DNA of 63,760 nt, counting the filler, from Octopus bimaculoides (Eukaryota): assembly GCF_001194135.2 (NCBI RefSeq). It is 7 parts of 6 records of this genome, joined end to end, with 100 filler letters (N's around TTAATTAATTAA, not from the genome) between each part and the next. Parts side by side here need not be neighbours in the genome. Positions count along the whole stretch, not along the records: positions 1 to 14,906 come from NC_068987.1; 6 more parts are not named here. One strand, written 5' to 3'. Numbering within the stretch: position 1 is the stretch's first letter; each line of letters opens with the position of its first letter. Shown here piece by piece: positions 9,583 to 9,970 of this stretch. The notes under the pieces are model-generated. The model worked only from the letters and a program-made list of their open reading frames with translations, was not told where the DNA came from and searched no databases. Both the position numbers and the translations under genes were made by a program.

Positions 9583-9678
9583 TTACATTATTTACATTAT
9601 TTACATTATTTACATTTGACGGATGTTTGTCTTCATCTTGTTTGCTGTTAACACAACGTTGCGCTCTTAACCACTACA
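9583..9678 (-). mobile_element. SINE family E, internally deleted copy
   Basis: tRNA-head piece (gtagtggttaagagcgc) joined directly to the tail (aacgttgtgttaac..ccgtcaaatg(taaataatg)n). Confidence 0.75.
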
Positions 9679-9698
9679 CCCGCACTTCTAACAAATAC

Positions 9699-9970
9699 GG
9701 GCATATGGCGTAGTGGCTAAGAGCGCGGGCTACTAACCCCAAGATTCCGAGTTCGATTCCAGGCAGTGACTTGAATAATAATAATACTAATAACATCGAA
9801 AAATACCTTAGGAATGAGAACCCAGGTTCGAAATTTCCCCAAGACGCCTGATGAAGGTTGGAGGGATATCAGTCGAAACATTGTATTAACAACAAAGATG
9901 AGGACAAATATCCGTTAAATATAAATAATGTAAACAATGTATATAATTCCTCATCTCTTAAATATAGAAC
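9699..9970 (+). mobile_element. SINE family E, full length (tRNA head, (AAT)n, hammerhead-like tail)
   Basis: A box TGGCGTAGTGG, B box GAGTTCGATTCC; CTGATGA at 9848-9854 and GAAA at 9875-9878; homologous to 56930-57198. Confidence 0.85.

What the first reader, a model, noticed from the sequence alone, without database searches (positions are those of the whole stretch)
9583..9970. Family E SINEs occur twice as head-to-head inverted pairs
Seen: all four copies fall in two divergent pairs, a minus copy then a plus copy separated by about 20 bp (9583-9970 and 56930-57530). In each pair one partner is damaged (an internal deletion here; an interrupted head in the other pair). Independent insertion would rarely give this twice in 64 kb. 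Established: Penelope insertions often carry inverted terminal copies. Inference: the inverted dimer is the integration product, or the family targets its own head. Either way the pair forms a long RNA hairpin, a likely ADAR substrate in a cephalopod, and places two AACGUU palindromes close together for dimeric cleavage.
Basis: partly seen in the sequence, partly recalled or inferred. Interest (0 to 1): 0.7.

Follow-up and report, generated by a model that had tools for sequence, protein, structure and literature searches.

The report
Head-to-head retroelement pair, one insertion
Two copies of a short ribozyme-bearing retroelement sit head to head inside a single 12-bp target-site duplication, so they most likely went in together in one event, as Penelope-like retrotransposons are known to do; this is a known integration signature seen here in a SINE-like element.

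Summary
The pair is real. The plus copy (9699-9947) has Pol III A and B boxes, a Penelope-type minimal hammerhead motif and a 9-mer repeat tail. The inverted partial copy (9585-9680) keeps only 20 nt of the head and about 75 nt of the 3' part, and lacks about 150 internal nt. An 18-nt spacer separates the two heads. A perfect 12-bp direct repeat, TTCACTTTAATT (9573-9584 and 9975-9986), occurs nowhere else in the piece and brackets the whole pair. Neither monomer has a convincing duplication of its own. A 27-nt extension (9948-9974) follows the tail of one arm only. An inverted damaged copy at the 5' side, one duplication around the unit and a one-sided extension of about 30 nt together match the published signature of Penelope-like element integration. 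The hairpin is predicted (z -8.35), but ADAR editing was not testable. The "two AACGUU palindromes for dimeric cleavage" idea fails here: one palindrome has decayed, one arm has lost the catalytic core, and the arms are antisense to each other. The second pair, family-wide statistics and the host species could not be checked. I rate it a new member of a known kind, of moderate interest.

The parts
9573..9584 (.). Left copy of the 12-bp target-site duplication, TTCACTTTAATT. It directly abuts the tail of the minus arm.
   Evidence: The motif occurs only at 9573 and 9975 in the whole piece, even with one mismatch allowed. A longest common substring of 12 or more was found in 3 of 2311 random window pairs of the same geometry.
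9585..9680 (-). Inverted, damaged copy (minus arm). It holds the 9-mer tail repeats (about 9585-9616), the 3' domain (9617-9660, including an intact AACGTT at 9655-9660), the deletion junction at 9660|9661, and 20 nt of the head (the A-box region, 9661-9680). It lacks the first 7 nt or so, the B box, CUGAUGA and helix II.
9681..9698 (.). 18-nt spacer between the two heads (CGCACTTCTAACAAATAC), not homologous to the element. It resembles the duplication only weakly (CACTTCTAA vs CACTT-TAA, p about 0.05), and a left-flank stretch at 9546-9556 (10 of 11, p 0.024, uncorrected).
9699..9947 (+). Full-length copy (plus arm). The 5' end is inferred from tRNA-style numbering, 7 nt before the A box. It holds the A box TGGCGTAGTGG (9706-9716), the B box AGTTCGATTCC (9750-9760), a central body, the 3' domain and the 9-mer tail repeats (about 9918-9947).
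   Evidence: (the only A+B box pair in the piece).
9843..9887 (+). Minimal type I hammerhead-like motif. Helix I 5' strand GACGC; CUGAUGA (9848-9854); unpaired A (9855); helix II GGUUGG/UCAGUC (9856-9861 and 9869-9874) with loop AGGGAUA; GAAA (9875-9878); ACAU (9878-9881; ACGU in the minus arm, so a CpG decay); U17 (9882), with the predicted cut at 9882|9883; helix I 3' strand GUAUU.
   Evidence: one hit in the piece and none in 400 simulated pieces. The features are those of PMC4209133. Rfam hammerhead models did not match.
9948..9974 (+). 27-nt extension beyond the point where the minus arm ends (TCCTCATCTCTTAAATATAGAACGGTA). It is present on one arm only. Its first 9 nt pair with 9896-9904 to close a 3' stem-loop.
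   Evidence: Compare the optional 30-40 bp 'tail' of Penelope-like elements (PMC8557442, PMC3846280, PMC11167929).
9975..9986 (.). Right copy of the 12-bp target-site duplication, TTCACTTTAATT.

Best explanation
The pair is the product of one retrotransposition event, not of two. Shown: a staggered break at an AT-rich site left a 12-bp duplication, TTCACTTTAATT, around the whole unit. Inferred: both 3' ends of the break primed reverse transcription on RNA of the same element family. The bottom strand gave the full plus copy, starting at the distal start site, so it carries the 27-nt extension. The top strand gave the inverted copy, starting about 25-27 nt further in, at the tail repeats. The two cDNAs met head to head and were joined with 18 nt of filler. 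The inverted arm lost about 150 nt, either by a template jump at a short AG-CG similarity during synthesis or by a later deletion in an unstable near-palindrome. The element has a Pol III A/B-box head and a Penelope-type minimal hammerhead. With the inverted copy and the one-sided extension, this points to mobilisation by a Penelope-like element RT/endonuclease. That enzyme has been shown in vitro to cut and extend both strands and to use two RT start sites. A LINE of the L2/CR1 type is the main alternative enzyme source. I put the single event at about 0.7 and a Penelope-type partner at about 0.4.
For: A perfect 12-bp direct repeat lies exactly at the outer edges of the unit and nowhere else in the piece. 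It abuts the tail repeats of the minus arm directly. There is no significant direct repeat around either monomer. Inverted similarity is confined to the element and does not extend into the adjacent flanks. The 27-nt extension is on one arm only and pairs with the conserved 3' domain. The minimal-hammerhead descriptor hits once, inside the plus copy, with 0 hits in about 10.9 Mb of simulated sequence. The only A+B box pair in the piece is in the plus copy. Arm divergence of about 13% is compatible with an unmutated 12-bp duplication (P about 0.19). Literature: an inverted 5'-truncated copy adjacent at the 5' end, and a 30-40 bp tail often at one end only (PMC8557442); an inverted pLTR, a 31-bp tail at the 3' end of one inverted pLTR, a 9-10 bp duplication around the whole insert, microhomology-mediated internal deletions, and head-to-head as the commonest arrangement (PMC3846280); a PLE protein that cleaves and extends both strands, with the tail being the sequence between two RT start sites (PMC11167929); and dual minimal hammerheads 100-700 bp apart on opposite strands in Schistosoma mansoni (PMC4209133).
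Against: This is one locus only. No other family copy could be obtained, so the element's true termini, the status of the 27 nt as element sequence, and the frequency of pairs are unknown. The inverted arm is not simply 5'-truncated; it has an internal deletion. The tail is a 9-mer microsatellite (AATGTAAAY)n preceded by a small stem-loop, and the last bases of the target resemble the repeat unit. Both look more like L2/CR1-type LINE priming than like PLE initiation, which in vitro needs no homology to the target. Rfam hammerhead and tRNA models do not match. The hammerhead descriptor was written after seeing the sequence, though from published criteria. No PLE is present in the piece. The spacer has a marginal resemblance to the duplication (p about 0.05), which a two-step model could use.
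Confidence: 0.55

Rival explanations
1. This is one event, but driven by a LINE (L2/CR1-like) rather than a Penelope-like element. It would be a variant of twin priming in which both target strands prime on the microsatellite tails of two SINE RNAs. The hammerhead-like motif would be a passenger or a relic.
For: The tail consists of 9-mer tandem repeats containing TGTAA and is preceded by a small stem-loop, which is the general layout of CR1/L2-type SINE tails (PMC4824008). The last 6 nt of the target are scored by TRF as part of the repeat array, which suggests annealing of target to tail. It has a tRNA-style Pol III head and a 12-bp duplication.
Against: Classical twin priming gives non-overlapping parts of one RNA; here both arms carry the same 75 nt or so of the 3' end. 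It does not explain the 27-nt extension between the repeats and the duplication on one arm. The significant minimal hammerhead is the hallmark of PLE pLTRs (PMC4209133). The LINE fragment in the piece (4546-4932, minus strand) shares nothing with the element.
Confidence: 0.2
2. These are two independent insertions. Either the family prefers to land next to the head of an existing copy, or the adjacency is chance.
For: The spacer contains CACTTCTAA, resembling the duplication's CACTT-TAA (p about 0.05). That could be a decayed third copy of the target if the same site was hit twice. The arms differ by about 13%, so a different age cannot be excluded.
Against: Each monomer should have its own duplication, and the younger one's should be at least as well preserved as the perfect outer 12-mer. 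None is found. The middle 'copy' would have 4-5 changes in 12 nt while the outer two have none. Chance adjacency at the piece's density is about 0.2%.
Confidence: 0.1
3. A solitary plus copy was inserted first. A later DNA-level inverted duplication, by replication template switching or hairpin repair, then copied part of it upstream.
For: Close inverted repeats arise from, and provoke, such rearrangements. The short AG-CG similarity at the deletion junction 9660|9661 fits slippage.
Against: The duplicate would have to start exactly in the tail repeats and land exactly between the left duplication and the head, with no flank copied. The arm ends at the element's tail, next to the duplication.
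Confidence: 0.07
4. The whole 390-bp unit is a foldback or MITE-like DNA transposon with terminal inverted repeats of about 75 nt. Alternatively, it is an assembly artefact.
For: It has inverted termini and a flanking direct repeat. The assembly is a draft with N gaps.
Against: The right inverted repeat ends 27 nt short of the duplication. A 12-bp duplication is atypical for such elements. The interior carries a Pol III promoter and a hammerhead in one orientation only. The arms are about 13% diverged with a 150-nt asymmetry, unlike the near-perfect palindromes of sequencing or assembly chimeras.
Confidence: 0.05

Closest known systems
Integration architecture of endonuclease-positive Penelope-like elements (Penelope/Poseidon, Neptune, Naiad; Arkhipova et al. 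2013, PMC3846280; Craig et al. 2021, PMC8557442; Frangieh et al. 2024, PMC11167929)
   Same: A head-to-head inverted, shortened copy lies at the 5' side. One short duplication (9-10 bp in the published cases, 12 bp here) surrounds the whole unit. An optional extension of about 30 nt sits at the 3' end of one arm only. Microhomology-associated internal deletions occur. There is a minimal hammerhead motif, and the target is AT-rich.
   Different: Here there is no RT/GIY-YIG ORF, no pseudo-LTR partial tandem, and no palindrome or overlap at the inverted junction (an 18-nt spacer instead). The element has a Pol III A/B-box head and a microsatellite-like tail, neither of which is described for PLEs. 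The extension is 27 nt rather than 30-40.
Sm-alpha / Sj-alpha SINE-like elements of Schistosoma (Ferbeyre et al. 1998; Laha et al. 2000; reviewed in PMC6765202)
   Same: They are short non-coding retroposons with a Pol III promoter followed by a type I hammerhead.
   Different: The schistosome elements carry canonical hammerheads and are typically in direct tandem. Here the motif is of the minimal (PLE) type, the copies are inverted, and self-cleavage is untested.
Metazoan non-LTR retrozymes (PMC7761336; bioRxiv 10.64898/2026.07.22.740005)
   Same: They are small non-autonomous hammerhead-bearing repeats proposed to be mobilised by PLEs.
   Different: Retrozymes are direct tandem arrays and are reported to lack promoters. 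This element has A and B boxes and appears as an inverted pair.
L1 twin priming (5' inversions; from my own knowledge of Ostertag and Kazazian 2001)
   Same: The second target strand is used as a primer on RNA, giving an inverted segment inside one duplication.
   Different: Twin priming yields non-overlapping segments of one RNA and a poly(A) tail at one end only. Here both outer ends are 3' tails, and the arms overlap by about 95 nt.

Membership tests
tRNA-derived SINE (Pol III type 2 promoter) | A box (TRGCNNAGTGG) and B box (GGTTCGANNCC) at tRNA-like spacing | tested here: met
   Plus copy: TGGCGTAGTGG at 9706 and AGTTCGATTCC at 9750, 33 nt apart. This is the only such pair in the piece. 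The minus arm keeps only the A-box region.
tRNA-derived SINE (Pol III type 2 promoter) | Head recognisably homologous to a tRNA (cloverleaf) | tested here: not met
   ARAGORN finds none at default settings, and only an out-of-register pseudo-structure at 75% thresholds. There is no Rfam tRNA match at E<=10.
tRNA-derived SINE (Pol III type 2 promoter) | Each copy flanked by its own target-site duplication; dispersed multi-copy family | tested here: not met
   The duplication surrounds the pair, not each monomer. Copy number could not be assessed: only these two copies are in the piece, and none were found elsewhere.
Penelope-like element integration product / PLE-dependent non-autonomous element | Minimal type I hammerhead (CUGANGA, unpaired nt before helix II, G10.1-C11.1, long helix II, GAAA, palindromic 15.2-16.2, short helix I) | tested here: met
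   Descriptor hit at 9843-9887, with 0 hits in 400 simulations. The palindromic ACGU is intact only in the minus arm; it is ACAU in the plus arm. Caveats: Rfam models were negative, the descriptor was post hoc, and cleavage was not tested.
Penelope-like element integration product / PLE-dependent non-autonomous element | [quoted passage not shown] | tested here: met
   Minus arm at 9585-9680, 18 nt from the plus head. It is shortened by an internal deletion of about 150 nt plus about 7 nt at the 5' end, not by plain 5' truncation.
Penelope-like element integration product / PLE-dependent non-autonomous element | Optional extension ('tail') of about 30-40 bp at one end of the unit | tested here: inconclusive
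   A 27-nt extension at 9948-9974 is on the plus arm only, and it pairs with the 3' domain. Whether it is element sequence cannot be shown without other copies.
Penelope-like element integration product / PLE-dependent non-autonomous element | One target-site duplication around the whole tandem/inverted unit | tested here: met
   12-bp TTCACTTTAATT at 9573-9584 and 9975-9986.
Penelope-like element integration product / PLE-dependent non-autonomous element | Sequence shared with the pLTR/3' end of an autonomous PLE in the same genome | not testable with these tools
Dimeric hammerhead ribozyme | Two sense-oriented catalytic cores whose palindromic helix III strands pair | tested here: not met
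   There is only one core, in the plus arm. The minus arm lacks CUGAUGA and helix II. The arms are antisense to each other. Only one AACGTT remains.
ADAR substrate (long dsRNA from inverted repeats) | Stable intramolecular duplex of tens of bp | tested here: met
   Fold of 9573-9986: -125.2 kcal/mol against -76.5 +/- 5.8 for shuffles, z -8.35. The outer imperfect duplex is about 75 bp and the inner stem 20 bp.
ADAR substrate (long dsRNA from inverted repeats) | Transcription across the pair and clustered A-to-G mismatches in RNA | not testable with these tools
   No expression data are available, and the host species is not confirmed.
MITE / foldback DNA transposon | Terminal inverted repeats abutting the duplication on both sides | tested here: not met
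   The left side abuts. The right inverted repeat ends at 9947, 27 nt before the duplication.

The most novel reading that the evidence does not exclude
A Pol III-driven, hammerhead-bearing SINE family parasitises Penelope-like RT/endonuclease and is integrated by priming on both strands of the target. On this reading, inverted dimers are its native insertion product. The two arms would start at the two PLE reverse-transcription start sites, so one carries the 'tail' and the other does not. That would be natural, in vivo evidence for the two-strand, two-start-site mechanism so far seen only in vitro. It would also make this a class of SINE that seeds a genome with ready-made dsRNA hairpins.
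Probability: 0.3. Interest if true: 0.6.

Novelty: new member of a known kind. Interest (0 to 1): 0.4.

Why it matters
If the family-wide pattern holds, this short element would be a compact natural reporter of how Penelope-like elements integrate, a mechanism still largely unresolved. It would show that the widespread dispersed minimal hammerheads of invertebrate genomes include promoter-bearing SINEs rather than only truncated PLEs. It would also identify a built-in source of closely spaced inverted repeats. Such repeats are hot spots for deletion, and when transcribed they are dsRNA for editing or silencing pathways. As it stands, it is one well-resolved locus that fits known behaviour.

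Tried and rejected
1. Fishing for more family copies:
- A spurious 54-aa ORF inside the element found nothing in the protein collection.
- A conserved 21-mer of the 3' domain gave one chance hit in metagenomes (L001) and none in viral contigs.
- Loci fetched through the mariner fragment's relatives (L002, L003) come from other organisms and lack the element.

2. Confirming the host. The searches with the mariner ORF and the LINE RT ORF gave best hits of only 68-77% identity, none named as a cephalopod. The octopus assignment stays unverified.

3. Rfam. There was no tRNA or hammerhead match, even at E<=10 on the 471-nt region. The miRNA and RAGATH-7 hits there merely reflect the head hairpin.

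4. A search for printed sequence fragments of the element in the paper library found none.

5. A larger palindrome around the pair was rejected. Only a weak outer inverted repeat (9201-9243 / 10169-10205) exists, with nothing between it and the pair.

6. A second duplication around the plus copy alone (CACTTCTAACAAATAC vs CATCTCTTAAATATAG) was an eyeballed 8 of 16 and did not survive alignment.

7. The hammerhead region alone is not unusually stable (z -0.18). That is expected for a minimal motif without helix III.

8. The idea that the inverted arm was copied from self-cleaved RNA was rejected, because the arm keeps 6 nt upstream of the predicted cleavage site.

Full report
**Observation**

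Region 9573-9986 contains two copies of one short repeat in divergent (head-to-head) orientation.
- The repeat finder reports arms 9587-9644/9890-9947 (58 nt, 86% complementary) and 9661-9680/9707-9726 (20 nt, 90%).
- BLAST of the plus copy against the piece gives 77 nt at 83% and 20 nt at 90% on the opposite strand, and no other copy in 1-14906.
- Reading the sequence, the plus copy runs from about 9699 to 9947.
- The minus copy (9585-9680) consists only of the tail and 3' domain joined directly to 20 nt of the head. It lacks about 150 nt, equivalent to plus 9727 to about 9875.
- The two heads are separated by 18 non-homologous nt (9681-9698).

The second pair and the claim about 'all four copies' lie outside the piece and were not examined.

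**What the element is**

- The plus copy carries the only A-box/B-box pair in the piece: TGGCGTAGTGG at 9706 and AGTTCGATTCC at 9750. This is a Pol III type 2 promoter layout.
- No tRNA is recognised by ARAGORN or Rfam, so 'tRNA-derived' rests on the boxes alone.
 - a 5-bp helix I;
 - CUGAUGA;
 - one unpaired base;
 - a 6-bp helix II opening with G10.1-C11.1;
 - GAAA;
 - a four-base ACGU in place of helix III (ACAU here, a CpG decay; ACGU is intact in the minus arm);
 - U17.
- A descriptor encoding those criteria hits once in the piece, at this place. It hit nothing in 400 simulated pieces, about 10.9 Mb on both strands.
- Caveats: Rfam's hammerhead models do not match, the descriptor was written after I had seen the sequence, and activity is untested.
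- The 3' part is a small stem-loop followed by 9-mer repeats, (AATGTAAAY)n.

**The key new fact**

- A perfect 12-bp direct repeat, TTCACTTTAATT, lies at 9573-9584 and 9975-9986. It brackets the whole pair.
- It occurs nowhere else in the piece, even with one mismatch allowed.
- An exact match of 12 or more was seen in only 3 of 2311 random window pairs of the same geometry.
- On the left it abuts the tail repeats of the minus arm directly.
- On the right, 27 nt (9948-9974) lie between the plus arm's tail repeats and the repeat.
- Neither monomer has a convincing duplication of its own. The best candidate is a 9-nt gapped resemblance between the spacer and the 12-mer (p about 0.05).
- Inverted similarity stops at the element's edges. 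The adjacent flanks are not inverted copies of each other, so this is not a segmental palindrome.
- The arms differ by 10 substitutions (8 of them transitions) and 5 gap columns in 79 columns. That rules out a sequencing or assembly palindrome. It is also compatible with an unmutated 12-bp duplication (P about 0.19).

**Mechanism**

- One duplication around two inverted copies whose 3' tails both face outward is what is expected if both 3' ends of a staggered break primed reverse transcription on RNA of the element, and the two cDNAs were then joined head to head.
- Three published features of Penelope-like element insertions are all present here (PMC8557442; PMC3846280):
 - an inverted, shortened copy immediately adjacent at the 5' side, with head-to-head the commonest form;
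 - a 9-10 bp duplication around the entire unit;
 - an optional extension ('tail') of about 30-40 bp at the 3' end of one arm only.
- Frangieh et al. showed in vitro that a PLE protein cleaves and extends both strands, unlike R2 and L1. They also showed that reverse transcription starts at two nearby internal sites, and that the tail is the sequence between them (PMC11167929).
- In this pair one arm ends at the tail repeats and the other 25-27 nt further on. That is what two start sites would give.
- The first 9 nt of the extension pair perfectly with 9896-9904, closing a 3' stem-loop in both the MFE and centroid folds (p about 0.05). This suggests the extension is element RNA rather than filler.
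- Cervera and de la Pena also noted dual minimal hammerheads 100-700 bp apart on opposite strands in Schistosoma mansoni.

**What argues for a LINE instead**

- The microsatellite-like tail preceded by a stem-loop is the usual layout of CR1/L2-dependent SINEs (PMC4824008).
- TRF extends the repeat array 6 nt into the target, which hints at target-to-tail annealing. PLE initiation in vitro does not need such annealing.
- I therefore separate two claims: a single integration event (about 0.7), and a Penelope-type partner (about 0.4, against about 0.2-0.3 for a LINE).
- Classical L1 twin priming does not fit as such, because both arms contain the same 3' sequence.

**The damaged arm**

- The deletion junction (9660|9661) joins GAGCGC of the head to AACGTT of the hammerhead's 3' side.
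- A short AG-CG similarity is present at both parental positions.
- Two origins are possible: a template jump during cDNA synthesis, or a later deletion. From my own knowledge, closely spaced long inverted repeats are unstable, so survivors tend to have an asymmetric arm. The two cannot be told apart here.
- The arm keeps 6 nt upstream of the predicted cleavage site, so it was not copied from self-cleaved RNA.

- Hairpin: a transcript across 9573-9986 is predicted to fold into a long hairpin, at -125.2 kcal/mol against -76.5 +/- 5.8 for shuffles (z -8.35). The structural requirement for ADAR is met.
- Editing: transcription, editing and even the host species are untested. Neither the mariner nor the RT fragment found a cephalopod-named relative.
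- Dimeric cleavage is not supported:
 - only one AACGTT remains (9655-9660), and the other has become AACATT;
 - the minus arm has lost the whole catalytic core;
 - on one transcript the arms are antisense, whereas dimeric hammerheads need two sense cores (PMC4209133).

**Comparison and novelty**

- The closest known things are the PLE integration architecture, the promoter-plus-hammerhead SINE-like elements Sm-alpha/Sj-alpha of schistosomes (PMC6765202), and metazoan non-LTR retrozymes. Retrozymes are reported to lack promoters and occur as direct tandems (PMC7761336).
- I found no paper linking octopus SINEs to hammerheads.
- The pair itself is explained by known behaviour. A Pol III-headed SINE using that route would be a modest extension.
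- I rate it a new member of a known kind, with interest 0.4. The evidence is one locus. The census, the partner search and the empty-site test listed under next steps would decide it.

Noticed in passing
8183-8331, 10418-10568, 10634-10800: Three copies, about 88% alike, of a different, GC-richer SINE-like family. Read on the minus strand it has a tRNA-like head (GAGTTCAAATTCC B box). All three are in the same orientation, and two lie 216 nt apart in direct order. Unlike the family in question, none is in an inverted pair.
   Followed up: partly
9201-9243 and 10169-10205: A weak outer inverted repeat (about 80% over about 40 nt, with gaps; best segment E=0.005) lies roughly symmetrically about 400 nt either side of the pair. 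It could be the termini of an older MITE-like element of about 1 kb that hosts the insertion, or it could be chance.
   Followed up: partly
9681-9698 vs 9546-9556 and vs 9573-9584: The 18-nt spacer between the heads resembles a left-flank stretch (ACTTCTAACAA vs ACTACTAACAA, p 0.024 uncorrected). It also resembles the duplication itself (CACTTCTAA vs CACTT-TAA, p about 0.05). This could be filler templated from nearby sequence, or it could be coincidence.
   Followed up: partly
5462-5794 (+): An ORF fragment of a Tc1/mariner-type DDE transposase (its relatives carry Pfam DDE_3). The best relatives are only 68-77% identical (an amphipod, a spider, and unnamed ENA eukaryote assemblies).
   Followed up: partly
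4546-4932 (-): An ORF fragment resembling the C-terminal part of a non-LTR (LINE) reverse transcriptase. There were 546 relatives in the collection, the best at 70% identity. Its 3' region shares nothing with the element studied.
   Followed up: partly
3526-4125, 6105-6347, 7663-8071: Three assembly gaps (N runs of 600, 243 and 409). Those at 3526-4125 and 6105-6347 are bordered by (TG)n/(TA)n-type microsatellites. These and the 12560-13040 microsatellite tract produce the spurious mir-297, mir-3149 and mir-466 matches in Rfam.
   Followed up: no
9945-9961: TTCCTCATCTCTTAAAT, at the start of the 27-nt extension, resembles from memory the TTCCTCATCTGTAAAAT stretch of the MIR/CORE-SINE consensus. 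This was not tested, is short, and may be chance.
   Followed up: no
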